From Macrostomum lignano (taxonomy: Eukaryota), in NCBI GenBank assembly GCA_002269645.1, contig NIVC01003961.1, forward strand, positions 1-64,000: a stretch of DNA of 64,000 bases, in the 5' to 3' direction. Shown one piece after another: positions 19,684-56,019 of this stretch. A model generated the notes under the pieces. That model did no database searches. It was not told the origin of the DNA and saw only the letters and a program-made list of their open reading frames with translations. The translations under genes were made by a program, and so were the position numbers. Every line of letters starts with the position of its first letter. Position 1 is the first letter of the stretch.

Positions 19684-20202
19684 ATGCGCCCGCTAATCTC
19701 TTGCTGGCTCTTTGTAGCCGCTCTTTGTCTGACCGCCGTTGCCGTCAGCAACGCGAACTCCAACCTGGATGAAGACGATGACTACATTGGAGTAGCTCCT
19801 GAGCATGAGCAGCTCCGATACAACTCAAAAGGCCTCCGTAGAGATCTTCGTAAGTGGCAGTACAATGGCGGCATGTTCGGAAAGCGGCAGTACAATGGCG
19901 GCATGTTCGGAAAACGGCAGTACAACGGCGGCATGTTCGGAAAACGGCAGTACAACGGCGGCATGTTCGGAAAACGGCAGTACAATGGCGGCATGTTCGG
20001 AAAGCGGCAGTACAACGGCGGCATGTTCGGAAAGCGGCAGTACAACGGCGGCATGTTCGGAAAGCGGCAGTACAACGGCGGCATGTTCGGAAAACGGCAG
20101 TACAACGGCGGCATGTTCGGAAAACGGCAGTACAACGGCGGCATGTTCGGAAAACGGCAGTACAACGGCGGCATGTTCGGAAAACGGCAGTACGAAGAGT
20201 AA
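19684..20202 (+). CDS. Neuropeptide precursor, 172 aa: signal peptide plus 11 copies of QYNGGMF-G-KR (predicted pQYNGGMF-amide); SIFamide/NLP-10-like
   Basis: Signal peptide MRPLISCWLFVAALCLTAVAVS, then an acidic spacer. The 30-bp repeats at 19858-20187 differ only at synonymous sites (AAT/AAC, AAG/AAA). Dibasic KR cleavage sites and an amidation Gly are present. Confidence 0.95.
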   Translation: MRPLISCWLFVAALCLTAVAVSNANSNLDEDDDYIGVAPEHEQLRYNSKGLRRDLRKWQYNGGMFGKRQYNGGMFGKRQYNGGMFGKRQYNGGMFGKRQYNGGMFGKRQYNGGMFGKRQYNGGMFGKRQYNGGMFGKRQYNGGMFGKRQYNGGMFGKRQYNGGMFGKRQYEE

Positions 20203-26072: not shown

Positions 26073-28878
26073 TTATTCCTTTTTCAGCCGCAGCCGCTCG
26101 TTGATAATCTTGCACCGCTGGGCGCACTCGTCCGCGCTGCGGGAGCCCACGGCCACAGCCACCTGATCCCAGCGCTCCTTCGTACCTTTGGGAAATTGTC
26201 TGAGCGCCGCCTCCAGCTTAGACTGCTCAGCCTGACTCCAGGCCCGAGTCCGCTGCTGAGCTTCATCTATATCGTCTTCTTCTGCTTTAACGGTTACGCC
26301 TCTCTGCTGCTGCTGCTGCTTCTGGCGCTTATTTCGACGCCTTCGCTGCGCCCTGCCGGCGCCGCCATCCGAATCGGCGTCGCTGTCAGAGTCCGATTCG
26401 CCGCACACCGCCGCCCCATCGGTGTTGACTTCGAAAGCGGCGTTGAGGCTGGCGGCAGCCTGGCGCCGCATCTGCTGCTCGGCCTCGCGAGCCCGGGCGG
26501 CCACGTCCGGCACGGCGCGATGCAGCAGGGCGGCGATTTTCTCCCAGCGGCCGGGCGTGCCGCTTGGGAATCTGGCAACTGCCTTGACCAGAAGCTGCTG
26601 CTCCGCCTCGCTCCAGGGACCCTCGACTAGAGCCGGCGGAGTCGTTGATTCCGCCTGGTCGCCGTTGCTGACGGCGGCTTTGACTGGCGGAGTCGGCAAC
26701 GGCTGCTGCTGTTCAGCCAGCAATTGCTGCTGCACCTGGGCCAGTTGCTGCTCCCGGCGCTCGCGTTTCTGCTGCTTTCTCTGCTCCCGCCTGCGGGCCT
26801 CCTCGGCTGCGGCTTCCGCTTCCGCTTTGGCCGCCCGCTTCCGTTGCAGTTCGGCGTCGCGCCAATCGGCCAGGCTGTCCAGCGCCCAACGGCAGGCGCC
26901 TGGCGCGCCAACAGCGCAGGCGTAGAGTCCGCGACCGATGGCCAACGGCAGGAGGTCCCGCCAGCCTGGGCCCACTAGCGGCTCCTGTTCCAGCTCTTCT
27001 TCCAGTTGTTTCTGCTTTTTCTTGCTCTTCCGCCGGAATAGATCGTCGAATGCTAGTTTCCTTTCAATGTAGACACCCCACAGGACTAAATAGTGGCCGA
27101 CTGTGAACGCCAAGCAGAACACCAGCATCACTTCCGCTAAGCTCATCTTTCGCCACTTCCGGTAATAAAACATCGGGGTGCGCCAGTCGGGCAGCCCATT
27201 GTCAAGGATCTCGTCGTACCTGGCCAGGGTAGAGGGCAGATGGAGAGGTTCAGACTTGATTCTCGGTTCTCGTGATTGAAAAAAAACTTTGAATCAGGCC
27301 TAGGAGTGATTCTTGGTTCCCGGACGGTTCTTGATTTTGGTTACCAGCCTTTCTTGAAAATTGGCCAACCCCCACAACAGAGTGTACATGCCTGACGATG
27401 TACACCCTGTGTGAGCGTGTGCATGAGTGCGTGCACTGTTTTCAGGATGATGTTGCCGAAGGCACTGCGCCAGGGTGCCCACAGCCCAATTGCAAGTATT
27501 ATTAGTAGAAGTTATTCTGAGAATATCTTATGAAAATTCATTTTCGGAATTGACACCGCCGAGATACTTGCGAGCTGGGCGGATCCCACCTGAGCGCTCG
27601 CAATAAGGTATCATTACTTTAGGCATGAGAAATTTCCAAACGCGTCACAAAATGGGGAATTGAAGTATTCGATAAAAAAGTACTTTTTCACCTGCTGGGA
27701 TCAAAGCATAAAATTTGATGGACTGTTAACTTGATTAAACGCTATTAACCGATTAAAAGGCGTGTCATGTGCGTTACAATGAATATAATCACATAAAAGT
27801 TTTTAGCTTGTCTAGACACTTATATAGGACAATCGATAAATAAAAAATGGGGAAACACAAATGCTTGAAAGTAGACGATTATAATTGTATGCGTAGCTAA
27901 TAACTAGGTATTAGGAATGGGCTATTGCGAGCGTAAACAATCCAATTAGAATCGCCGATGACACCGATTAAGAATCGCCCATGACACCATGAGGTATCGC
28001 CCATGACACCCATGAGGAATCGCCCATGACACCATGAGGTATCACCCATGACACCCATTAGGAATCGCCCATGACACCATTAGGAATCGCCCATGACACC
28101 ATGAGGAATCGCCCATGACACCATGACGTATCGCCCATGACACCCATGAGGAATCGCCCATGACACAATGACGTATCGCCCATGACACCCATGAGGAATC
28201 GCCCATGACACCGTGACGTATCGCCCATGACACCCATGAGGAATCGCCCATGACACCATGAGGTATCGCCCATGACACCCATTAGGAATCGCCCATGACA
28301 CCATTAGGAATCGCCCATGACACCATGAGGAATCGCTCATGACACCATGAGGAATCGCCCATGACACCATGACGTATCGCCCATGACACCCATGAGGAAT
28401 CGCCCATGACACCATGACGTATCGCCCATGACACCCATGAGGAATCGCCCATGACACCCATGAGGAATCGCCCATGACACCATGAGGTATCGCCCATGAC
28501 ACCCATGAGGAATCGCCCATGCCACTATAAGGACTCGATGCCATTAAATCAAACGCACCTCCGCCTCAGAGTTTCATCCTTGAGCACTTCATTGATGGCG
28601 TTGAGTTTGCGGAAATAATCCACAGTCTCATCGTCGTGCTTGTTCACCCGATCCGGATGGTACTGCATCGACACCCGACGGAAGGCCCGTCGAATCTCCT
28701 GACTGCTGGCTTCACGTTTCGTGTTCAACAGTTCGTAGAAATTGCCGTTGACCTCTTCAACTAAGTCGAATAGTTGCAGCTCGCGCTGGTCGAATGCGCT
28801 AACGGAGGGCGAGTGAGATAGCACTAGCAGAGTCAGTAGTAGCGAGGGAAGCGGCCACACCATGCCGATGGCTGCCAT
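26073..28878 (-). CDS. DNAJC1: DnaJ homolog subfamily C member 1 (ERdj1/MTJ1), 488 aa, 2 exons
   Basis: Exon 1 is 28878-28559 (donor AG|GTGCGT) and exon 2 is 27219-26073 (acceptor GCCAG|G); phase 2 matches. The protein has a signal peptide, a J domain with HPD, RRRYDEILDNGLPDWRTPMFYYRK, a TM helix and two SANT/Myb domains (WSEAEQQLL..., WSQAEQSKLE...). Confidence 0.95.
27955..28520. repeat. 22/23-bp minisatellite (GAATCGCCCATGACAC(C)CATGAG) in the DNAJC1 intron
   Basis: About 25 copies. Confidence 0.95.
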
Positions 28879-33551: not shown

Positions 33552-33875
33552 TTATTGAGTCTTCGTAGGCGCCTTTTTATCACTGCTACTAGTAGTAGCG
33601 CTAGTAGTAGCTTCATCCTTCTCGTAGTACCTGTGCTTGAGCGCCCGGTACTTGCGCAGCATGTACAGCGCCTCCAGCTCTTTGATGACGAACTCACCCC
33701 GGCCAATCAGCACCTTGATCTGGTCCGGGTCCTTGACTCCGCTATTCTTCAAGAATACGGACTTTAGTCGGTCGCGAAAGTAAGCGTAACCTTTGGGATA
33801 GTCGCGTCCCATGTACAGCAGGTTTTTGTACAGGGCGATCACCTGAGAGCGGAGCTGCGGCGGCGGTGACGTCAT
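33552..33875 (-). CDS. LYRM5: LYR motif-containing protein 5 / ETF regulatory factor 1, 107 aa
   Basis: [37 protein letters not shown]...[25 protein letters not shown] matches LYRM5/ETFRF1. AATAAA on the minus strand at 33531-33536; acceptor CTGCTAG| at 33900. Confidence 0.95.
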
Positions 33876-33984: not shown

Positions 33985-36335
33985 GGGAAGGACGGAGGGA
34001 GCAGCGGGCATCACTGAAGGGCACGGAGAAGCGGGCATCACTGAAGGGCACGGAGAAGCGGGCATCACTGAAGGGCACGGAGAAGCGGGCATCACTGAAG
34101 GGCACGGAGGGAGAAGCGGGCATCACTGAAGGGCACGGAGGGAGCAGCGGGATCACTGAAGGGCACGGAGGGAGCAGCGGGCATCACTGAAGGGCACGGA
34201 GGGAGAAGCGGGCATCACTGAAGGGCACGGAGAAGCGGGCATCACTGAAGGCACGGAGAAGCGGGCATCACTGAAGGGCACGGAGGGAGAAGCGGGCATC
34301 ACTGAAGGGCACGGAGGGAGAAGCGGGCATCACTGAAGGGCACGGAGAAGCGGGCATCACTGAAGGCACGGAGAAGCGGGCATCACTGAAGGGCACGGAG
34401 GGAGTAGCGGGATCACTGAAGGGCACGGAGGGAGAAGCGGGCATCACTGAAGGGCACGGAGAAGCGGGCATCACTGAAGGGCACGGAGGGAGAAGCGGGC
34501 ATCACTGAAGGGCACGGAGGGAGAAGCGGGCATCACTGAAGGGCACGGAGGGAGAAGCGGGCATCACTGAAGGGCACGGAGGGAGAAGCGGGCATCACTG
34601 AAGGGCACGGAGAAGCGGGCATCACTGAAGGGCACGGAGGGAGAAGCGGGCATCACTGAAGGGCACGGAGAAGCGGGCATCACTGAAGGGCACGGAGGGA
34701 GAAGCGGGCATCACTGAAGGGCACGGAGAAGCGGGCATCACTGAAGGGCACGGAGGGAGAAGCGGGCATCACTGAAGGGCACAGAGGGAGAAGCGGGCAT
34801 CACTGAAGGGCACGGAGAAGCGGGCATCACTGAAGGGCACGGAGAAGCGGGCATCACTGAAGGGCACGGAGGGAGAAGCGGGCATCACTGAAGGGCACGG
34901 AGGGAGAAGCGGGCATCACTGAAGGGCACGGAGGGAGAAGCGGGCATCACTGAAGGGCACGGAGGGAGAAGCGGGCATCACTGAAGGGCACGGAGAAGCG
35001 GGCATCACTGAAGGGCACGGAGGGAGAAGCGGGCATCACTGAAGGGCACGGAGAAGCGGGCATCACTGAAGGCACGGAGAAGCGGGCATCACTGAAGGGC
35101 ACGGAGGGAGAAGCGGGCATCACTGAAGGGCACGGAGGGAGAAGCGGGCATCACTGAAGGGCACGGAGAAGCGGGCATCACTGAAGGGCACGGAGGGAGA
35201 AGCGGGCATCACTGAAGGGCACGGAGGGAGAAGCGGGCATCACTGAAGGGCACGGAGGGAGAAGCGGGCATCACTGAAGGGCACGGAGAAGCGGGCATCA
35301 CTGAAGGGCACGGAGGGAGAAGCGGGCATCACTGAAGGGCACGGAGAAGCGGGCATCACTGAAGGCACGGAGAAGCGGGCATCACTGAAGGGCACGGAGG
35401 GAGAAGCGGGCATCACTGAAGGGCACGGAGGGAGAAGCGGGCATCACTGAAGGGCACGGAGAAGCGGGCATCACTGAAGGGCACGGAGAAGCGGGCATCA
35501 CTGAAGGCACGGAGAAGCGGGCATCACTGAAGGGCACGGAGGGAGAAGCGGGCATCACTGAAGGGCACGGAGGGAGAAGCGGGCATCACTGAAGGGCACG
35601 GAGAAGCGGGCATCACTGAAGGCACGGAGAAGCGGGCATCACTGAAGGGCACGGAGGGAGTAGCGGGATCACTGAAGGGCACGGAGGGAGAAGCGGGCAT
35701 CACTGAAGGGCACGGAGAAGCGGGCATCACTGAAGGGCACGGAGGGAGAAGCGGGCATCACTGAAGGGCACGGAGGGAGAAGCGGGCATCACTGAAGGGC
35801 ACGGAGGGAGCAGCGGGATCACTGAAGGGCACGGAGGGAGAAGCGGGCATCACTGAAGGGCACAGAGGGAGAAGCGGGCATCACTGAAGGGCACGGAGAA
35901 GCGGGCATCACTGAAGGGCACGGAGGGAGCAGCGGGATCACTGAAGGCACGGAGGGAGCAGCGGGATCACTGAAGGACACGGAGGGAGCAGCGGGATCAC
36001 TGAAGGCACGGAGGGAGCAGCGGGATCACTGAAGGGCACGGAGGGAGCAGCGGGATCACTGAAGGCACGGAGGGAGCAGCGGGCATCACTGAAGGGCACG
36101 GAGGGAGAAGCGGGCATCACTGAAGGGCACGGAGGGAGAAGCGGGCATCACTGAAGGCACGGAGAAGCGGGCATCACTGAAGGGCACGGAGGGAGAATCG
36201 GGCATCACTGAAGGGCACGGAGGGAGAATCGGGCATCACTGAAGGGCACGGAGGGAGCAGCGGGATCACTGAAGGGCATGGAGGGAGCAGCGGGCATCAC
36301 TGAAGGGCACGGAGGGAGTAGCGGGATCACTGAAG
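33985..36335. repeat. Minisatellite, 31/27/26-bp units GGGCATCACTGAAGGGCACGGAG(GGAG)AAGC, about 80 copies
   Basis: Direct reading. Confidence 0.97.
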
Positions 36336-37045
36336 GACACGACCAAGTCGAAAAATCTCTTACTATGTTAGGATACACAAACCAACTGTATTTAAAAATT
36401 GACACTATTTGCAACTCGGAGAAAGCATGCAATGAAATACACAGGATCATAACAAAAAAGAAAGTAAACGCAAAGAAATAATAGAATTAAATATCCATTG
36501 TACATGATTACATACATATAGTTCAAAAAGCAATAGTTCTGAAGGCCTATCCTTTTTAATCAACAGTACTTAGCATGTTTAATTAAACTAATATCGTTTA
36601 CGTTTAATTGGTATGCAGAAGTTCTTTTTACAACAAAAGTAAGCTTTACAGACTACTTACTAAGTAGTGCATAATAGTCAGCAATGAATCTTCCTCGCTA
36701 TGGCTTTGCTTTACCATTACCTAAAAGTCGCCAGAGAGGCCTAAGAGCCGATTTGAGGCGCTTTATTGTCCTATAATTACTCTGGGACCTGGGACCGAAA
36801 AGTCGCATATGCAGCGTCACCGCGTTGAATTTAAAGCGCATCTTCGTCACTTTAATTATGAATTAGAATCTCATTTCGCATTTATAACAACTTTATTTAC
36901 ACTACTTGAGTTAGTAGAAAGTTAAGCGCTAACATAACGATTCTTGAACGATTTTTGCGACGATTTTTTGCGATTTAAAAACACACGTGATGTACTCGTG
37001 ACTCAACAGTCACCCCTCCGTCGCATTACAGTCGTCTGAGTCGTT

Positions 37046-37452: not shown

Positions 37453-38624
37453 TCACGATTTCGGCGGTTTATAATCTTCGCCATTGAGTCGCATCTGGCC
37501 GGTGAACCGGTGCACCTTGATATTAACCGGCCGTTTGATCATCCGATCGGCGTGCGACCGGCTAGCCAGATGCTGCCGCCAGGCCGCCTCCGAAACGGTG
37601 GCAAAGGCGCAGCGGAGGCAATCGTAGCGGCGCTGCCGTTTGGTGCAGGCGGCCTCGTGCGAGGCCAGAGTCTCCCGCTTAGCTGAGCGATGGCCGCAGA
37701 AGTAGCGGCAGGAGTACAGCGGCTGGATGTTGGCGTGGGCCTGCCGGCGATGGCTAACAATCTCATGGTAGGTGCGGCACACGAACGAGCAGAATGAGCA
37801 CTGGAAGCAGAGCTCTTTATGAGTAGAACAGTGCGCAAAATAGCGGCGCTGACTGTCGCAGGTGAAGCTGCACTTCTCGCAGGCGAATCTAGGCGCAAGC
37901 GGTTTCTCTTCGTTGACTATTTCAATGTCACTGTCGGCGCCGGTGTCTGTTGCGACGGCAGCCGACGAATTCGTGGCAGCAGCAGCAGCAGCAGTGGAAG
38001 CAGGAGCAGACGAAACCAGAGACTGATCAACAAGGCCAGCTAAACTAGCCGAGTGCTTGAGCTCGCAGTGAGCCACGGCAGCATCAGCCGTGTTGAACAG
38101 CATCGAAGCAGCGCAGGCTGTGCAAGCCATCCGGCTGTTGAGATGAAAAGCCAGCAGGTGTTCGGCCAGCACCCGGTCGCTGGGGAATCGACCGCCAGCA
38201 GATTTACAAGCAGCTATGGGACAGCGGATTAACGACCGGGTGGCAGAAGCCGCACCTGTGACAGTTGGAGCGGCTGGAGAGACAAGAACCGTGGGAGGCA
38301 CCACCGGGCGAGATGGTGCGTCAACAATCTGTACATCGTCATCGTCGCCATTGTACACCGTCGAATTCCAACTGACGACATTTCGACTCTGCCTGCTGTT
38401 GATCCCATTGCTATTGCTACTCTGCTGTCTAGCCACATTAGCAACGTTGGGGCTATTCCTAACTCCAATAGTCCATCTGCCATTGCCAACCCCGTGGCCA
38501 TTGTTGCGGATGGCGCTGCCATTGCCACGACTGCTGTTATGGTTGTGATCATCAGTGTCTTCCTCATCGTCAATTATGACAACAATGGGCAGGCCACCAT
38601 TGGGCCGACCACTGCTTGGTGGAA
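37453..38624 (-). CDS. Multi-SIM C2H2 zinc-finger protein (ZNF451-like features); large terminal exon, 5' exon not located
   Basis: The open frame runs from the acceptor CAACAG| (38625) to TGA at 37453. Six zinc fingers: CPIAAC..H..H, CTAC..H..H, CEKC..H..H, CSFC..H..H, CRYFC..H..C, CLRC..H..H. Acidic-flanked SIM-like motifs: VVIIDDEED, DDDDVQIVD, DSDIEIVNEE. Confidence 0.85.
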
Positions 38625-40254
38625 CTGTTGTATGTGGCAAAGACAAAAATAATGCAACAGAATTATTTAATTAATCAAATTTTTAATTAGTATTTATTCA
38701 TATTGATTATATAAGCAGACTTAGGCCTATCTTAGATACTTAACTATTTTTTATGTTCAGATAGAATTAGTAAATATTATATAATGACCAGTACATTTTA
38801 ATAGTATACTATTCCTACAATTGTATATAGTTAATATCATTCATAGCTTTTTAACTTTAAATCTATTGATAAAAATAAATTTAGGCCAGCCAAAATAGTC
38901 AAGCCAATAGCCAATGCAATAAGCCCCCTAATATTTACAGAAATAAGCCTTACAGCTTAGGCCTAAAGTATATAGAGGACTACAAAATAATACATTGCTT
39001 CTTGCTATAGCTCGTGTCTTTAATTTATTTTTCTTTTTGTAATAGCTATATGTCTAATTTAGCAAATTAAGAGATATTTTCTAATTAAAGCAACAAAGCT
39101 AGGGCTAAAAGACCTTTTGCTAACCTGTTGAAAAAGTAGACAATGAGAATTTTATTAGAATTTCATATTTATGGCATGCAAAAACTAAGTGTTGGTTAGG
39201 AATTAAAAAATTTTATTATTGGCCTTATATTTAAACTTTTTATGCTAGAACTAATTATTTAGTAGGCCTAAAGCAAAGTATATTAAATTTTTCAAAATAC
39301 AAAAGCTCTTGATTTTTGTTATATTATATATTTTAACTATAACTCTAGACTATAGCCTCTTTATAAAAAGGAAGTGCTTATCCATACAGTTCCTATGCTA
39401 ATAATTTGTATTTTATTCACATGGATCCATGTCAATAAGTTCCAGCTTATCCCCATGGCAGCTTATTGAAATAGCTAGCTGCCACCATTCAAGTCTATAA
39501 GCTGTGTCAATAATTCCAATTTTATTTACACAGATCCTTGTCAATAATTTCAGCTCATCCCATGGCTAAGATTGTGTAGTTGTTTGTGTTTAGTTTGTAT
39601 ACTGACATTAAATGTTGCTACTAGGCCTAGTATTTTAGTCTTTTTATAGTAACATATATAGCATAGCTTAAAGTAATTGTTATTACAATGTTGTGACTTT
39701 CTGTTAAATTCACAATGTGACAATGTGATTTTAACATCTTGCTAACTCTCCATCCAAAATTGATATTGTCATTATTATTAGTATTATTATCATCATTATA
39801 ACATATTGAATTTTAGATTTTTCAAGTCTTGTTCATCTTTATCTTAGGGTTGTTTGGTCCGTTTGCAAAGCCAGCAGCTAAGCAAATACTCATATTTAAA
39901 ATCAACCCTCTTAATGACAAAAAATTTATCAAAGTACTTGATACCATTTAATATTCAGAAGTTTATTTGGAAGATTTGTAAAATAGTGAAAACAAAAAGA
40001 TGGTTTTTGAAAAGATTTATTTCAAGGTGCTCTATTCTAATAAACTGCTTTGGGGATAAGCTGAAAATTATAGACATAGATCTATGTACTAGCAATCTTT
40101 GCCCCCCAATGGGGGACATCTGGATAGAATCCTTGTTCTTTACAAATAACAAATAGACAGCGAAATAAAGCCTTCATAAAAAACAACAGACATTCCCTCT
40201 TAAAAACAAAACATCCCAAGACAGCAAGCATCCTTAGACAACATTCAAGCATTG

Positions 40255-40660
40255 ATCCCCAAATAGCAAGCATCCCCCCAATAGCAAGAAACCCTAGATA
40301 GCAAGCATCCCCCAGATAGCAAGCATTCCCCCAGACCCCAGATAGTAAGCATCCCCCAGATAGCAAGCATCCCGCAGATAGCAAGCATCCCCCAGATAGC
40401 AAGCATCCCCCAGATAGCAAGCATCCCCCAGATTGCAAGCATCCCCCAGATAGCAAGCATTCCCCTAGACCCCAGATAGTGACATCCCCCAGATAGCAAG
40501 CATCCCCCAGATAGCAAGCATCCCCTAGATCGCAAGCATCCCCCAGACAACAAGCAACCCCTGATAGCAAGCATAACCTAGATACAAAGAGACCTTATAG
40601 ATATCTAACAACCCCCTCTCAGATAGCAAGTACTCTCCACCCCCAAGAGCAAGCATCCCC
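40255..40660. repeat. 18-bp minisatellite (CAGATAGCAAGCATCCCC)
   Basis: About 20 imperfect copies. Confidence 0.9.
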
Positions 40661-41435
40661 CTAATAGCAAGTATCCATCCTTAAATAGCAAGCATCCACC
40701 AGAGAACAAGTAGCTAGTGCAACAATTTCCTTAGCTTTATAATGGTTCCATTTTGTTTTGTATGACACTTCTTTTATGTATGAAATGGTGTCTTTTTTGT
40801 TAAAAAGGTGGTTCTTTAATGTTTGACATGGTAGCTCTTTGATGTTTGACATGGTGGCTCTTCTATGTTTGACATGATAGCTCTTTAATGTTTGACATGG
40901 TGGTTCTTTAATGTTTGACATGGTAGCTCTTTGATGTTTGACATGGTGGCTCTTTTAGGTTTGACATAATGGCTCTTTAATGTTTGACATGGTGGCTCTT
41001 TAATGTTCCATATGGTGGCTCTTCTATATTTGACATGGTGTCTTCTATGTTTGACATGGTGGCTCTTTTGTGTTTGACATGATAGTTCTTTAATTTTGAC
41101 ATGGTGGCTCTTTTTTGTTTGATATGGTGGCTCTTTTTTGTTCTACATGGTAACTCTTTTATGTTTGATACGGTGGCTTTTTAATGTCTGACATGTTGGC
41201 TCTTTTATGTTTGACATGGCGCTCTTTAATGTTCGACAAAGTGGCTCTGTAATGTTTGACATGGTGGCTCTTAATTGTTTGACATGGTGGCTCTTTAATG
41301 TTCGAAATGGTGGCTCTTTAATGTTCGACATGGTGGCTCTTTTATGATTGACATGGTGGCTCTTTAATGTTTGACATGGTGGCTCTTTTATGATTGACAT
41401 GGTGGCTCTTTTATATCTGACATGGTGGCTCTTTT

Positions 41436-45304: not shown

Positions 45305-45760
45305 TAAACTCTGGTCTCTCCCTGACTCTCCCTACGTCCCTTGGATCCTTTAAAATTTCTATCGTCTCTTTGTTTCCTCTCATCTCTCTCGTCCCTCGTC
45401 TCTCCTCTCTCCTCTCTCCCCTCTTCTCTCGTATCTTCCCTCATCTCTCTTCTCTTTCATCTCTCTTATCTCATCTCTTGTCTCTTCTTTTCTCTCTCCT
45501 CTCCTCTCTACTTTTTCGTTTTCTCTCTCCCCTCCTCTCTCCTCTCTCCCCTTCTCCTCTCTCCTCTCACCCCCTCTTCTCTCTGATCTTCATTCTCCTT
45601 TCTATTCTTTTCTCTCTTCTCTTAACTCTCTCCTCTACTCTCTCATCTCTCCCTCTTCTCTCGCCTCTTCCCTCACCTCTTTTCTCTCTCGTCTTTGCTC
45701 TCTCATCTTTCCTTTCTCTTATCTTATCTCTCTTATCTCTTCTCATTTCTCTCTACTCCC

Positions 45761-45837
<77 letters not shown>

Positions 45838-46030
45838 GTCTTTCTCTCTTATCTCTGCTCCTCTCTCTACTCTCTCCCCTCTCCTTTCTCCTCTTTCCTC
45901 TCCTCTCTCCTCACTCACTTCTCTACCTTTGTCTCTCCTCTCTCCTCTCGTCTCTGTAACCTCTCCTCTGTTCTCTCTACTCTCCCATCTTTTATCTGTT
46001 CACTCTCGTCTCTGCTCTTTCATCCCCCTC
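45305..46030. repeat. CT-rich low-complexity tract including a pure (CT)n
   Basis: Direct reading. Confidence 0.95.
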
Positions 46031-46291: not shown

Positions 46292-47050
46292 ATGGAAGTC
46301 GAAGAAGAAGTCCAGCGTGTGTCAAAGCAGTAACTGACGAGGAGCCTGCATTAAATTGTGACAAGTGCAAACATTGGTTCCATCGACTGTGTTTGACTGG
46401 TAAGTTTATGCCCTATATTCTGCATTCCATCAACTTAGTGTGTATTCACTCTTAAAATGGAAGAGGAGAAAGAGGGTAGAGGGGGGAGAAGGTAGAGGAG
46501 AGAGTGAAGAGGAAAAGAGGGTAGGGGAGAGAAGGTGGGGAGAGAGGGTAGAGGGGGGAAGGTAGAGGAGAGAGTGAAGAGGAAAAGAGAGTAGGGGAGA
46601 GAAGGTGGGGAGAGGAGGTAGAGAGGAGAGAGGGTATGTGGAGAGATGATAAATGGCTGAAATTGTTTTTGCTTTTTATTTTAGGAGCATCGTTCATTTC
46701 TGCTGCACAGTATAAGAAATTGATGAAGAAGAGTTCTTTTTCTTGGTGCTGCATGATCTGCACTACTCAGGAGGTACGTAGAGAGCGATGCTGAGGTTGA
46801 AGTTGCTGCTGCCGGTGGTGATGAGGTAGAGAGCGATGCCGAAATCGAAGTTGCTGCTGCCGGTGGTGATGAGGTAGAGAGCGATGCCGAAATCGAAGTT
46901 GCTGCTGCCGGTGGTGATGAGGTAGAGAGCGATGCCGAAATCGAAGTTGCTGCTGCCGGTGGTGATGAGGTAGAGAGCGATGCTGAAATCGAAGTTGCTG
47001 CTGCCGGTGGTGATGAGGTAGAGAGCGATGCCGAAATCGAAGTTGCTGCA
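46292..47050 (+). pseudogene. Disrupted two-exon PHD-finger gene fragment with an acidic 16-aa repeat, truncated by the right TIR
   Basis: Exon 46292-46399 (G|GTAAGT) and exon from 46685 (TTTTTAG|GA). Restoring one base at about 46310 gives MEVEEE-CPAC-...-CDKC-KHWFHRLC-...-WCCMIC (C4HC3). A 48-bp repeat follows, readable as EVESDAEIEVAAAGGD (about 6 copies) after a second 4-nt shift at about 46776. Confidence 0.75.
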
Positions 47051-48845: not shown

Positions 48846-50814
48846 ATTCTATTTTACAGAAACTATAAGGGTGAATATCCTTAGACTTCAAAGACTTCTT
48901 ACTTGTATCTTGATTAGATTACTATGTTGTTATACTAGTGTATAGCTTATTGTTATTGATTTTATACCAAATTATGCCAAATTGCATGTATATTACACAT
49001 ATCTGCTTTGCCTGCACTAGTAGTATATAACAAAATATTAATCAGGATAGAAGAAAAGATCTTAAAAATCTAGAATATTTATCACTAAACAAATAGACAC
49101 TTATATTAGCAATTTAATTAGACAAATAACGAAAAGGCTATTTGTCTGGTCACCAGACTAAATAACAATTGCCAATACTAAAATAAATGATATTAGCTTA
49201 TATAACTTAAATTATAAGGCAAAGAAGGGGCATTTCAGTCATTTTGTCTGCTGCCATTTCGTCTGCTATTCTTTTGTCTACAAAAATACAATGCAATGCT
49301 GATGTAGTTGTTTTGTCTACCAATAAAATATTAAATCATGCTAGTATAACATTAGTATTCATGTGTAGGCCCTTATATAATATTTAAAGAAAATATCTGG
49401 CCTCTGTTTGTATATCTTAAAATACCTAAAGTAAAAATAGGCCTAATGAAATCTTTTTTTTAAGTACTAGTGAAGGCCTATCTAAAAATATTATTACCCA
49501 AAAGACCTAACCAAATATTGAGACTTGAGTTAATTCCACTTATATACTTACATTTTGTTTATTATGAATAAACTTTGCAATAAGATAGCAAATGTGTTAT
49601 CATCATTGGATGGGGTTGGGCCAGGGATCATAACAATGCTCACAATAGCTAGCCAATCATAATCATATTCAACTACAAACTATACTCTATCTTCTGATTC
49701 ACTAACTAGTGAATAGTTTCATACAATCATAGTTTTTATAGTTTTAACTAGATCTTAGAAAATAAAGATTAGCAAGAATATACTTTGAGTAATTAGATAT
49801 GCTAATATTACTTTTTCTATTACTAACCAACTCATTCTTTTTGGCCATAGACATTCTCAAGTATTAGTGCCATATTAGACAATGTTTAATATTTTTGTAT
49901 CAATTTGAAATATAAAAGATTTTAACAAACAATTTAAGAAGAATGCCTTATGTTCAATAGAAATCTCAACCACTGCTTGCTATAGCCAAGCCTTCCAATA
50001 GTTAGGCACTAGTGCTTTGGTTAAAGGATAGCAAAAATAAACTATTAATGGTACTAATACTTGATATCGCCTTGACCAATCTATCAATCAGGTGCTAAGC
50101 ACTTTTAATAGTTGAAGATTACAGCAATGCTTCTTATTTGAGTGGCAACTAATATGTATATTCAACAGGCTATTGTTTGATAAAAGGAATGCATTGTAGA
50201 GCACCTTGTCTAAGAGTAGCACAAAGAAGAATGGTACTAATGTGTTACCTTCTGGAATTCCTAATAAAGTTTCAAATAGGTTAGATAGCCTATCTACTAT
50301 CATGATAATGATATAATATTGTAATATAGCAACCTGACGTGACTAATAGCATCATCTAGTTGCAAGCCCTTAGGTTAGGGATGGCATTTTTTTCAATCTA
50401 AAAATGCAAATCAATGCACTTAATAGCTATTTTATACTTTTAATGACATTTCTTTTTAACATAGCCTGTTATTCTAGGTGCTCATTTATTCAATTAACAG
50501 TCAAATCTACAATTTTGCCATTCACATTTCTGGTTTTATTGATCAAAAATTCTGCTGCAGTATTTATTCTTATTTATTGTATTATAATCAGAATGTATGG
50601 CAAAAGCACTTTATTTTTTCCATGCTAGTTTTTCTATATTCATTGTTTAAAAATCTTGGAAGTTTAATTTGGAGTTTAATTTTTTAGTATGCAGCTATGT
50701 TTTCAATGATAATAATTTAAATGAAATTAGTATTTGTTTTTTGTTTTAATAAAAATTACTCAAACATTTTTTGTTAACACTTCAGCAGTTCACCCTGCGA
50801 CAATAACTTTTTAA

Positions 50815-56019
<5,205 letters not shown>

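What the first reader, a model, noticed from the sequence alone, without database searches (positions are those of the whole stretch)
38278..38346. ZNF451-type SIM-PxRP-SIM SUMO-ligase module in an invertebrate zinc-finger protein
Seen: DDDDVQIVDAPSRPVVPPTVLVS upstream of six zinc fingers, plus two more acidic SIM-like motifs. Recalled: the catalytic N-terminus of human ZNF451 (ZATT) reads [23 protein letters not shown], and its first finger (LCPIMHC...LLLGHLKRFDH) resembles IRCPIAAC...VLAEHLLAFH here. ZNF451-type SUMO2/3 E3/E4 enzymes have been described as essentially vertebrate-restricted. Inference: this may be a distant ZNF451-like SUMO ligase or a convergent one. The second SIM is degenerate and lacks the acidic flank, so activity is uncertain.
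Basis: partly seen in the sequence, partly recalled or inferred. Interest (0 to 1): 0.75.

Follow-up and report, generated by a model that had tools for sequence, protein, structure and literature searches.

The report
Flatworm zinc-finger protein with SUMO motifs
A Macrostomum lignano (flatworm) gene encodes a six-zinc-finger protein with three clear SUMO-binding motifs; its likeness to the catalytic peptide of the vertebrate SUMO ligase ZNF451 is really in the sequence, but it is weak, half-matched and no sign of kinship.

Summary
The peptide DDDDVQIVDAPSRPVVPPTVLVS is encoded exactly at 38278-38346 on the minus strand. It lies in a 397-codon terminal exon of a Macrostomum lignano gene, whose second genomic copy is annotated as a partial hypothetical protein. 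The exon is under purifying selection: 7 of the 8 differences between the two copies are synonymous. It encodes six C2H2-type fingers and three canonical acid-flanked SIMs.

It is not a ZNF451 family member.
- The five ZNF451-specific Pfam finger models do not hit it.
- Profile-profile probability is 8-10%.
- The finger-1 likeness is generic: unrelated C-x4-C fingers score higher.
- Its nearest relatives are ordinary ZFP64/REST-like arrays and one orphan ortholog group.

The module likeness is half real.
- The SIM1-PxRP-V half matches. PSRP also occurs in a KIAA1586 homolog.
- The SIM1-PxRP spacer is one residue shorter than in all seven vertebrate sequences compared.
- TVLV fits no canonical SIM pattern and has no acidic tail.
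- The invariant L[ED][YC]IDL core is absent.
- Profile-level significance is about 5e-4 per protein, so dozens of such matches are expected per proteome.

Conservation could not be tested, because the ortholog contigs begin just before finger 1.

Best reading: a lineage-restricted SUMO-binding zinc-finger protein. ZNF451-like E3/E4 activity remains an untested long shot, at about 0.1.

The parts
37453..38624 (-). Terminal coding exon of the M. lignano zinc-finger gene. The open frame runs to 38646. The likely 3' splice acceptor is the AG at 38626/38625, after a pyrimidine-rich tract. The stop codon is at 37453-37455.
   Evidence: ORF; sequence reading. The two genomic copies differ at 8/1194 nt, 7 synonymous, against 6% divergence in the flanking intron. 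There is no in-frame ATG before ORF residue 173, so an upstream exon is expected, but none was found.
38548..38592 (-). SIM0: LPIVVIIDDEEDTDD, a hydrophobic core followed by an acidic tail.
   Evidence: Matches the psi-x-psi-psi, psi-psi-x-psi and [PILVM][ILVM]x[ILVM][DES]3 SIM patterns.
38278..38346 (-). The reported peptide: DDDDVQIVDAPSRPVVPPTVLVS.
   Evidence: Translation. Identical in the second genomic copy. AF2 pLDDT is 22-24 here, consistent with a disordered region.
38323..38346 (-). SIM1: DDDD-VQIV, with an N-terminal acidic flank, as in ZNF451 SIM1 (EDD-IQFV).
   Evidence: Matches [DES]3[ILVM]x[ILVMF]2 and psi-x-psi-psi. Aligned to ZNF451 SIM1 by BLASTP and by the module HMM.
38305..38316 (-). 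PSRP, followed by V. It corresponds to PLRP-V of ZNF451. It lies 2 residues after SIM1, against 3 in all seven vertebrate sequences compared.
   Evidence: PSRP itself occurs in a dolphin KIAA1586 homolog, P0173.
38281..38292 (-). TVLV, the proposed second SIM. It is degenerate, preceded by PP, and followed by SPAAP rather than acidic residues.
   Evidence: Matches none of five canonical SIM patterns. Not aligned by the module HMM. Vertebrates have an invariant L[ED][YC]IDL core plus an acidic tail.
38143..38223 (-). Finger 1: CPIAAC...HLLAFH (C-x4-C-x15-H-x4-H).
   Evidence: Conserved in the orthologs as CPIRDC...HLMNFH. The ZNF451-F1 HMM gives 9.1 bits, below two unrelated fingers.
38053..38124 (-). 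Finger 2: CTAC...HCELKH.
37906..37935 (-). SIM3: DSDIEIVNEE, immediately upstream of finger 3.
   Evidence: Canonical SIM patterns. Conserved as DSDSDLEIVDE in all orthologs; D-S-D, E-I-V and E are invariant columns.
37552..37881 (-). Fingers 3-6: three C2H2 and one C2HC. This is the best conserved part of the protein.
   Evidence: All 186 significant database hits align here. AF2 shows beta-beta-alpha elements with pLDDT 55-75. PDB phmmer hits ZFAT/CTCF at E about 1e-3.
37471..37512 (-). C-terminal conserved motif: TGxM..NG..ED.
   Evidence: Invariant T, G, N, G and D columns in the ortholog alignment.

Best explanation
This is the last exon of a fast-evolving, lineage-restricted nuclear C2H2 zinc-finger gene of the flatworm Macrostomum lignano.

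Shown: the protein has a long disordered N-terminal part carrying short linear motifs, followed by six fingers. Three of the motifs are canonical acid-flanked SUMO-interaction motifs: SIM0 (IVVII-DDEED), SIM1 (DDDD-VQIV) and SIM3 (DSD-IEIV).

Inferred: the protein most likely binds nucleic acid or chromatin through fingers 3-6. It most likely reads SUMO non-covalently through its SIMs. That would recruit it to SUMO-modified chromatin or transcription factors, or recruit them to it, as in other SIM-bearing zinc-finger co-regulators.

The PSRP...TVLV stretch after SIM1 is most likely part of a Pro/Val/Ala/Thr-rich linker. It resembles the ZNF451 catalytic peptide in only one of its two halves. 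The gene is not a ZNF451 relative.
For: Coding and constrained: 7 synonymous against 1 non-synonymous difference between the two copies, with 0.67% exon divergence against 6% in the intron.

Six fingers and exactly three canonical SIMs. SIM3 and all six fingers are conserved at 38-45% identity in the only ortholog group found.

The N-terminal 149 residues have pLDDT below 30, and fingers 3-6 fold as beta-beta-alpha units.

The nearest non-orthologous relatives are generic multi-finger proteins named ZFP64, REST or gastrula zinc finger. The nearest solved structures are ZFAT and CTCF.

Not ZNF451:
- No hit to PF23101, PF23102, PF23103, PF23104 or PF23108, which do hit ZNF451.
- hhalign probability is 8-10%.
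- phmmer against the ZNF451 set gives at most 23 bits, against 36-128 bits for the listed generic hits.

Module likeness is ordinary at scale:
- The module profile gives p of about 5e-4 per protein.
- A higher-scoring non-coding hit lies in the same window.
- The HMM aligns only SIM1 through RPV.
Against: - No SUMO-binding experiment exists. SIM patterns are short and prone to false positives.
- SIM0 and SIM1 could not be checked for conservation, because the ortholog contigs start just before finger 1.
- The true N-terminus is unknown: there is no in-frame ATG, and the second genomic copy's record (PAA64069.1) is called 'partial'.
- Pfam's general C2H2 models do not reach threshold on these fingers.
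- The coincidence is not trivial. A strict pattern (acidic SIM, 2-3 residues, PxRP[VI], 3 residues, hydrophobic run) never arose in 200000 shuffles. Both Pro and the catalytically critical Arg are present. PSRP is a natural variant in KIAA1586.
Confidence: 0.6

Rival explanations
1. Convergent (or very anciently shared) ZNF451-type minimal SUMO E3/E4 module. SIM1 plus PSRP would hold the Ubc9~SUMO thioester in the closed state. TVLV, or another SIM of the protein, would hold a second SUMO on the back of Ubc9. The adjacent fingers would recruit the acceptor.
For: - SIM1 has the same N-terminal acidic flank as ZNF451 SIM1.
- P-x-R-P-V is present, including the Arg that is essential in ZNF451 (PMC12630355; PMC4808808).
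- PSRP occurs naturally in a KIAA1586 homolog.
- The distance from RP to the hydrophobic run equals that in ZNF451.
- The module lies in a disordered region just upstream of zinc fingers, as in ZNF451.
- The strict post-hoc pattern occurred in 0 of 200000 shuffles.
- In cells, a ZNF451 tag with SIM2 mutated keeps residual activity (PMC12630355).
Against: - The SIM1-PxRP spacer is 2 residues, not the 3 found in all seven vertebrate sequences compared, from shark to mammal.
- TVLV fits no canonical SIM pattern, follows Pro-Pro and lacks the acidic or phospho-serine tail.
- The invariant L[ED][YC]IDL core is absent.
- Both SIMs are needed for robust activity in vitro (PMC12630355).
- The profile match is expected in roughly 1 of 1800 proteins of this composition.
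- No conservation evidence exists beyond a near-identical second copy.
- The literature warns that SIM-rich proteins can masquerade as ligases in vitro (PMC4808808).
Confidence: 0.12
2. A true but highly diverged invertebrate ortholog of ZNF451/ZATT.
For: The two weak similarities are collinear: the module (BLASTP E=0.008) and then finger 1 (hhalign top match, E=0.003, probability 10%).
Against: - No ZNF451-specific Pfam finger model matches.
- The conserved KDH[IV]DxQK...LARHVEVEK...AHGLQELEF...CVDxWLKMPGL block between module and finger 1 has no counterpart.
- There are six fingers, not twelve.
- Two unrelated fingers beat this F1 on the ZNF451-F1 HMM.
- ZNF451 is not among the protein's significant hits.
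- A search seeded with the ZNF451 N-terminus returned only vertebrates.
Confidence: 0.02
3. The N-terminal region, including the module, is not part of a functional protein. It could be an untranslated 5' part of the exon with translation starting at Met173 of the ORF, or a decaying gene. The SIM-like strings would then be chance.
For: - There is no in-frame ATG upstream of ORF residue 173.
- The second genomic copy's record (PAA64069.1) is named 'partial'.
- No upstream exon was found.
- The spliced-leader ATG would be out of frame at the predicted acceptor (with sequence reading).
- In the orthologs an ATG sits immediately after the acceptor, just before finger 1.
Against: - 172 stop-free codons lie upstream of Met173.
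- All three differences between the two copies in this region are synonymous third-position changes in this frame, and there are 8-fold fewer differences than in the intron.
- Three independent matches to stringent acid-flanked SIM patterns are unlikely in non-coding sequence.
Confidence: 0.08

Closest known systems
ZNF451 / ZATT (vertebrate SUMO2/3 E3 ligase and E4 elongase; PDB 5D2M)
   Same: - An acid-flanked first SIM followed by P-x-R-P-V and then a hydrophobic run at the same distance.
- The motif sits in a disordered region N-terminal to C2H2 fingers.
- The first finger is of the C-x4-C 'CPIxxC' type.
   Different: - The spacer between SIM1 and PxRP is one residue shorter.
- The second SIM is non-canonical and has no acidic tail.
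- The conserved helical block between module and fingers is missing.
- None of the five ZNF451-specific finger families matches.
- It has six fingers instead of twelve.
- The protein ends about 30 residues after finger 6.
- No detectable homology (hhalign 8-10%).
KIAA1586 (ZNF451-derived tandem-SIM protein of mammals)
   Same: It carries PSRP rather than PLRP, the same variant as here (P0173).
   Different: KIAA1586 keeps the full ZNF451 N-terminus, including the VLEYIDL second SIM. It has no zinc fingers of this type. It is clearly homologous to ZNF451, and this protein is not.
Generic multi-finger C2H2 proteins (ZFP64-, REST-, CTCF- and ZFAT-like arrays)
   Same: Fingers 3-6 align to these with E down to 1e-18 in the full library and to ZFAT/CTCF structures. 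They share the classical C-x2-C-x12-H-x3-5-H spacing.
   Different: - Only 24-33% identity, with no orthology.
- These proteins lack the F1-F2 pair, the conserved SIM3 and the C-terminal TGxM..NG..ED motif that define the small family found here.
Multi-SIM SUMO readers such as RNF4 (comparison from general knowledge, not tested here)
   Same: Several acid-flanked SIMs in a disordered region, suited to binding SUMO or SUMO chains non-covalently.
   Different: - The SIMs here are about 80-130 residues apart rather than clustered.
- There is no RING domain.
- The effector part is a zinc-finger array.

Membership tests
ZNF451-type SUMO E3/E4 (tandem-SIM enzymes) | First SIM ([IV]-x-[FI]-[VI]) with an N-terminal acidic flank | tested here: met
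   DDDD-VQIV matches [DES]3[ILVM]x[ILVMF]2 and is aligned to EDD-IQFV by BLASTP and by the module HMM.
ZNF451-type SUMO E3/E4 (tandem-SIM enzymes) | Inter-SIM x-x-R-P-[VI] motif (PLRP in human; the Arg is catalytically critical) | tested here: met
   PSRPV is present. Vertebrate variants are PLRP, CLRP, VLRP, TERP and PSRP, with R-P-[VI] invariant. The role of Arg40 is taken from PMC12630355.
ZNF451-type SUMO E3/E4 (tandem-SIM enzymes) | Fixed spacing: three residues between SIM1 and the x-x-R-P motif | tested here: not met
   Two residues (DA) here, against three (SEG, GEG, SEQ, GEA, GET) in all seven vertebrate sequences.
ZNF451-type SUMO E3/E4 (tandem-SIM enzymes) | Second SIM, L[ED][YC]IDL[VLI], followed by an acidic or phospho-serine tail | tested here: not met
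   VVPPTVLV-SPAAP. TVLV matches none of five canonical SIM patterns and adds nothing to the HMM alignment. There is no acidic residue within 10 positions downstream.
ZNF451-type SUMO E3/E4 (tandem-SIM enzymes) | Conserved region between module and finger 1 (KDH[IV]DxQK...LARHVEVEK...AHGLQELEF...CVDxWLKMPGL) | tested here: not met
   The region is present in all nine vertebrate sequences. hhalign and BLASTP find no counterpart. Only 18 residues separate the module from finger 1 here.
ZNF451-type SUMO E3/E4 (tandem-SIM enzymes) | ZNF451-specific zinc fingers (Pfam PF23101, PF23102, PF23103, PF23104, PF23108) | tested here: not met
   The models hit P0154 and P0162 at 1e-18 to 1e-31. They give no hit for this protein or for ortholog P0152, even at E up to 10. 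On the F1 HMM, unrelated fingers score higher.
ZNF451-type SUMO E3/E4 (tandem-SIM enzymes) | Catalysis: stimulates Ubc9~SUMO discharge and SUMO chain elongation | not testable with these tools
   This needs an in vitro SUMOylation assay. No multimer structure prediction was available.
ZNF451-type SUMO E3/E4 (tandem-SIM enzymes) | Conservation of the module among orthologs | tested here: inconclusive
   The module is identical in the second M. lignano copy, which is uninformative. The three ortholog contigs begin with an acceptor plus ATG just before finger 1 and hold no module-like coding sequence upstream.
SIM-containing SUMO-binding proteins | At least one canonical hydrophobic core with an acidic flank in a disordered region | tested here: met
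   Three are present, at ORF residues 21-25, 105-108 and 241-244. The surrounding pLDDT is below 30. SIM3 is conserved in the orthologs.
SIM-containing SUMO-binding proteins | Direct non-covalent binding to SUMO | not testable with these tools
   This needs a pull-down, NMR or ITC experiment.
C2H2 zinc-finger proteins | Cys2-His2 (or Cys2-His-Cys) ligand spacing with a beta-beta-alpha fold | tested here: met
   Ligand spacing is correct for six fingers. The ligands are invariant in the orthologs. AF2 shows beta-beta-alpha elements for F3-F6. ZFAT and CTCF structures are hit. General Pfam C2H2 models are below threshold.

The most novel reading that the evidence does not exclude
A flatworm zinc-finger protein has independently evolved, or retains from a pre-vertebrate ancestor, a minimal ZNF451-style catalytic peptide (acidic SIM, PxRP, second SUMO contact). 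It would act as a SUMO E3 ligase or chain-elongating E4. This 'smallest known' SUMO ligase design would then not be a vertebrate invention, and it would tolerate a shorter spacer and a degenerate second SIM.
Probability: 0.1. Interest if true: 0.65.

Novelty: new member of a known kind. Interest (0 to 1): 0.3.

Why it matters
If the ligase idea were true, it would extend a vertebrate-only class of SUMO enzymes to invertebrates. It would also loosen the sequence rules for the smallest known SUMO E3 module, which is now being used as an engineered SUMOylation tag (PMC12630355).

As things stand, the value is more modest.
- It puts a function-level label, SUMO-binding zinc-finger protein, on an orphan M. 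lignano gene annotated only as hypothetical.
- It defines a tiny family: six fingers, a conserved SIM before finger 3, and a C-terminal TGxM..NG..ED motif.
- It shows how a striking short-motif match can sit at chance level once it is scored against a family profile.

Tried and rejected
1. Upstream exon or start codon. ORF lists, GC profile, comparison with the second genomic copy and direct reading of GC-richer islands found only tandem repeats and transposon fragments. The two copies share nothing upstream of window 40088.
2. Spliced-leader start. The M. lignano SL ends in ATG (PMC8629364), but joined at the AG acceptor 38626/25 it would be out of frame.
3. Orthologs carrying the module. A word-index search was swamped and found only self. 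The exhaustive HMMER search found one ortholog cluster. A profile search found three clusters in all. Their contigs are 2.1-2.6 kb, come from an unidentified organism, and start just before finger 1.
4. phmmer of the 29-residue module against PDB found no hit even at E up to 10, although 5d2m_G is in the library.
5. Expression or annotation of Mlig024909 in the literature and in three papers' supplements: nothing found.
6. AlphaFold2 of the single chain gave mean pLDDT 43. That is enough to show a disordered N-terminus and finger-like units, but too poor for a fold search, which I did not run.
7. The finger-1 likeness was rejected as evidence of kinship after unrelated C-x4-C fingers scored higher on a ZNF451-F1 HMM.
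8. A first attempt to read loci in the sandbox failed because several records share one file. This was solved.
Full report
**1. The observation**

Translating window 38278-38346 on the minus strand gives DDDDVQIVDAPSRPVVPPTVLVS exactly. The peptide lies in an open frame of 397 codons, 37453-38646 (-). A pyrimidine-rich tract and an AG at 38626/38625 look like a 3' splice site, and AT-rich (about 28% GC) intron-like DNA lies beyond it.

Downstream of the peptide are six fingers with correct Cys/His spacing. There are also two further acid-flanked hydrophobic motifs, LPIVVIIDDEEDTDD and DSDIEIVNEE.

[29 protein letters not shown] is in PDB chain 5d2m_G. ILCPIMHCNKEFDNGHLLLGHLKRFDH is in the mammalian ZNF451 protein P0154.

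**2. Organism and gene**

The contig is NIVC01003961.1 of assembly GCA_002269645.1. A second copy on NIVC01001785.1 is annotated 'hypothetical protein BOX15_Mlig024909g1, partial [Macrostomum lignano]'. [quoted passage not shown]

The two copies differ at 8 of 1194 exon positions. Seven differences are synonymous third-position changes, three of them in the N-terminal region, and one is Ala/Val. The adjacent 1.4 kb of intron differs by 6%. The frame carrying the motif is therefore coding and under purifying selection.

There is no in-frame ATG before ORF residue 173. The M. lignano spliced leader ends in ATG (PMC8629364) but would be out of frame at the predicted acceptor. I could not find an upstream exon, because the two copies share no sequence beyond window 40088. 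The true N-terminus is unknown.

**3. Relatives**

An exhaustive HMMER search of 1.84 billion representative proteins gave 186 hits at E below 1e-3. All align through the C-terminal finger cluster. None aligns to the module region apart from low-complexity overlaps.

Only one cluster is a real ortholog (P0002, P0152, P0153).
- It is 38-45% identical over all six fingers.
- The SIM before finger 3 is conserved as DSDSDLEIVDE.
- A C-terminal TGxM..NG..ED motif is conserved.
- These proteins come from short contigs of three sequencing runs of an unidentified organism.
- In each contig the exon begins 'ttgcag|ATG CCT...' immediately before finger 1. Only AT-rich sequence broken by stop codons lies upstream.

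Either these orthologs have upstream exons that are not on the contigs, or they start at that ATG and lack the N-terminal region altogether. Conservation of the module therefore cannot be judged.

The next-best hits carry names such as zinc finger protein 64, RE1-silencing transcription factor B and gastrula zinc finger protein. The nearest solved structures are ZFAT and CTCF, at E about 1e-3.

**4. Is it a ZNF451 family member? No.**

A search seeded with the ZNF451 N-terminus returned 23 proteins. Every named one is a vertebrate, from shark to primate, including KIAA1586. This agrees with the literature's 'vertebrate ZNF451' (PMC4808808).

- Pfam holds five ZNF451-specific finger families. 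They hit ZNF451 at 1e-18 to 1e-31. They do not hit the flatworm protein or its ortholog even at E up to 10.
- Profile-profile comparison gives 8% probability against the single sequence and 10% against the family alignment.
- phmmer of the flatworm protein against the ZNF451 set gives at most 23 bits. Its generic hits score 36-128 bits.
- The conserved block that separates module and finger 1 in all vertebrates has no counterpart.
- The best hhalign match is indeed finger 1 against finger 1. However, when a ZNF451-F1 HMM is scored against 48 C-x4-C fingers from the unrelated hits, two unrelated fingers score higher (15.8 and 15.3 bits). The orthologs score 13-15 bits and the M. lignano finger 9.1 bits. 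The 'CPIxxC...HLxxFxH' likeness is generic.

**5. How good is the module match?**

| Sequence | SIM1 with flank | Spacer | x-x-R-P | Next four | Hydrophobic run | Tail |
|---|---|---|---|---|---|---|
| Human ZNF451 | EDD-IQFV | SEG | PLRP | VLEY | IDLV | SSDDEE |
| M. lignano | DDD-VQIV | DA | PSRP | VVPP | TVLV | SPAAPT |

Seven vertebrate sequences show what is invariant: [IV]xF[VI], three residues, xxRP[VI]L[ED][YC]IDL, then an acidic tail. The first two positions of 'PLRP' vary (PLRP, CLRP, VLRP, TERP, and PSRP in a KIAA1586 homolog).

The flatworm peptide reproduces the SIM1 half and R-P-V, including the Arg that is essential in ZNF451 (PMC12630355). It differs in three ways.
- Its spacer is one residue shorter.
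- It lacks the L[ED][YC]IDL core.
- It has no acidic tail.

TVLV matches none of five canonical SIM patterns. Those same patterns pick out exactly the three other SIMs of the protein.

**6. Statistics**

- BLASTP of P0154 against the protein ranks the module first, but at 23 bits and E=0.008 for that single pair.
- An HMM of the seven vertebrate modules scores the protein 5.5 bits and aligns only SIM1 through RPV.
- 11 of 20000 shuffles of the protein do as well.
- In a six-frame scan of this window, a non-coding piece scores higher.
- A loose pattern, SIM-x(1-4)-PxRP-x(2-6)-SIM with Thr allowed, arises in 16 of 200000 shuffles. It also occurs once in non-coding translation of the window.
- A strict pattern written after seeing the match arises in 0 of 200000 shuffles.

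The deduplicated M. lignano transcriptome has about 71,500 genes (PMC8629364). The profile-level match is therefore expected dozens of times per proteome, and the loose pattern a few times. The strict pattern is rare but post hoc. The coincidence is noticeable but not compelling.

**7. What it most likely is and does**

The AlphaFold2 model is poor overall (mean pLDDT 43). It still shows residues 1-149 without confident structure (pLDDT 21-29 over the first 140 residues, rising to 43 just before finger 1). Fingers 3-6 appear as beta-beta-alpha units with pLDDT 55-75.

The best-supported picture is a lineage-restricted nuclear C2H2 protein. Its disordered N-terminus and inter-finger linker carry three canonical SIMs, one of them conserved in the only known orthologs.

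- Shown: the protein is coding and constrained, and it has fingers and SIM patterns.
- Inferred: it binds SUMO non-covalently, and so couples a zinc-finger array to SUMO-modified chromatin or transcription proteins.

I put this at 0.6.

A ZNF451-like E3/E4 activity is mechanistically conceivable, because the half that engages Ubc9~SUMO is the half that matches. In cells, a ZNF451 tag without SIM2 also retains some activity (PMC12630355). Against it stand the altered spacing, the poor second SIM, the need for both SIMs in vitro, and the lack of any conservation evidence. I put it at about 0.1. True orthology to ZNF451 is at about 0.02.

**8. Limits**

- The ortholog organism is unidentified.
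- No multimer modelling or biochemistry was possible.
- No expression data for the gene were found.

The decisive tests are ortholog sequences from other Macrostomum species and an in vitro SUMO chain or discharge assay with Arg and SIM mutants.

Noticed in passing
window 19684-20202 (+): A 172-residue ORF with a signal-peptide-like start (MRPLISCWLFVAALCLTAVAVSNA) and 11 tandem copies of QYNGGMFGKR. This is the classic architecture of a neuropeptide precursor, with dibasic cleavage and a Gly amide donor. The predicted product is (pyro)QYNGGMF-amide. There is no Pfam hit, and no paper in the held library contains the peptide strings searched (GGMFamide, YNGGMF, NGGMFamide, GMFamide).
   Followed up: partly
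window 54938-55354 (+), probably exons from about 50.8 to 56 kb: This ORF matches the USP domain of the deubiquitinase CYLD (PDB 2vhf_A, E=1.9e-30). A CYLD ortholog is therefore the neighbouring gene on the other strand. Pfam gave no hit on the fragment.
   Followed up: partly
window 26073-27173 (-) and about 33552-33875 (-): Downstream neighbours on the same strand are a DnaJ + Myb/SANT (DNAJC2/ZRF1-like) gene and a small LYR-motif (Complex1_LYR) gene. The same gene order holds at the second genomic copy.
   Followed up: partly
window 40257-40578, 40807-41434, 36000-36341, 45377-45984, 46778-47049, and many others across the window: The window is unusually rich in tandem repeats, which produce long spurious ORFs in several frames. 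Examples:
- An 18-mer (CCCCAGATAGCAAGCATC, 17 copies) and a 23-mer (GGTGGCTCTTTAATGTTTGACAT, 27 copies), both in the intron just upstream of the exon.
- A 31-mer just downstream of the gene.
- Kilobase-scale arrays at 1-3.7 kb, 5.2-7.6 kb, 28.9-31.3 kb and 56.5-57.4 kb.

   Followed up: partly
window >40088 compared with L003 <8549: The two M. lignano copies of the locus are 94% identical from 1.46 kb upstream of the exon through the downstream genes. Further upstream they share nothing. The other copy carries a non-LTR reverse-transcriptase-like ORF there (L003 3124-4326).
   Followed up: partly
window 38229-38573 (-): A 114-codon ORF in another frame, which contains ATG codons, overlaps the N-terminal region and the module. 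The pattern of differences between the two copies (synonymous only in the main frame) argues that it is a by-product of GC-rich coding sequence.
   Followed up: yes
window 49470-49571 (+): An AT-rich, evidently non-coding ORF contains LKILLPKRPNQILRLELI. This satisfies a loose SIM-PxRP-SIM pattern, a useful reminder of how easily the loose pattern arises.
   Followed up: yes
whole window: No Rfam family reaches its gathering score anywhere in the 64 kb.
   Followed up: yes
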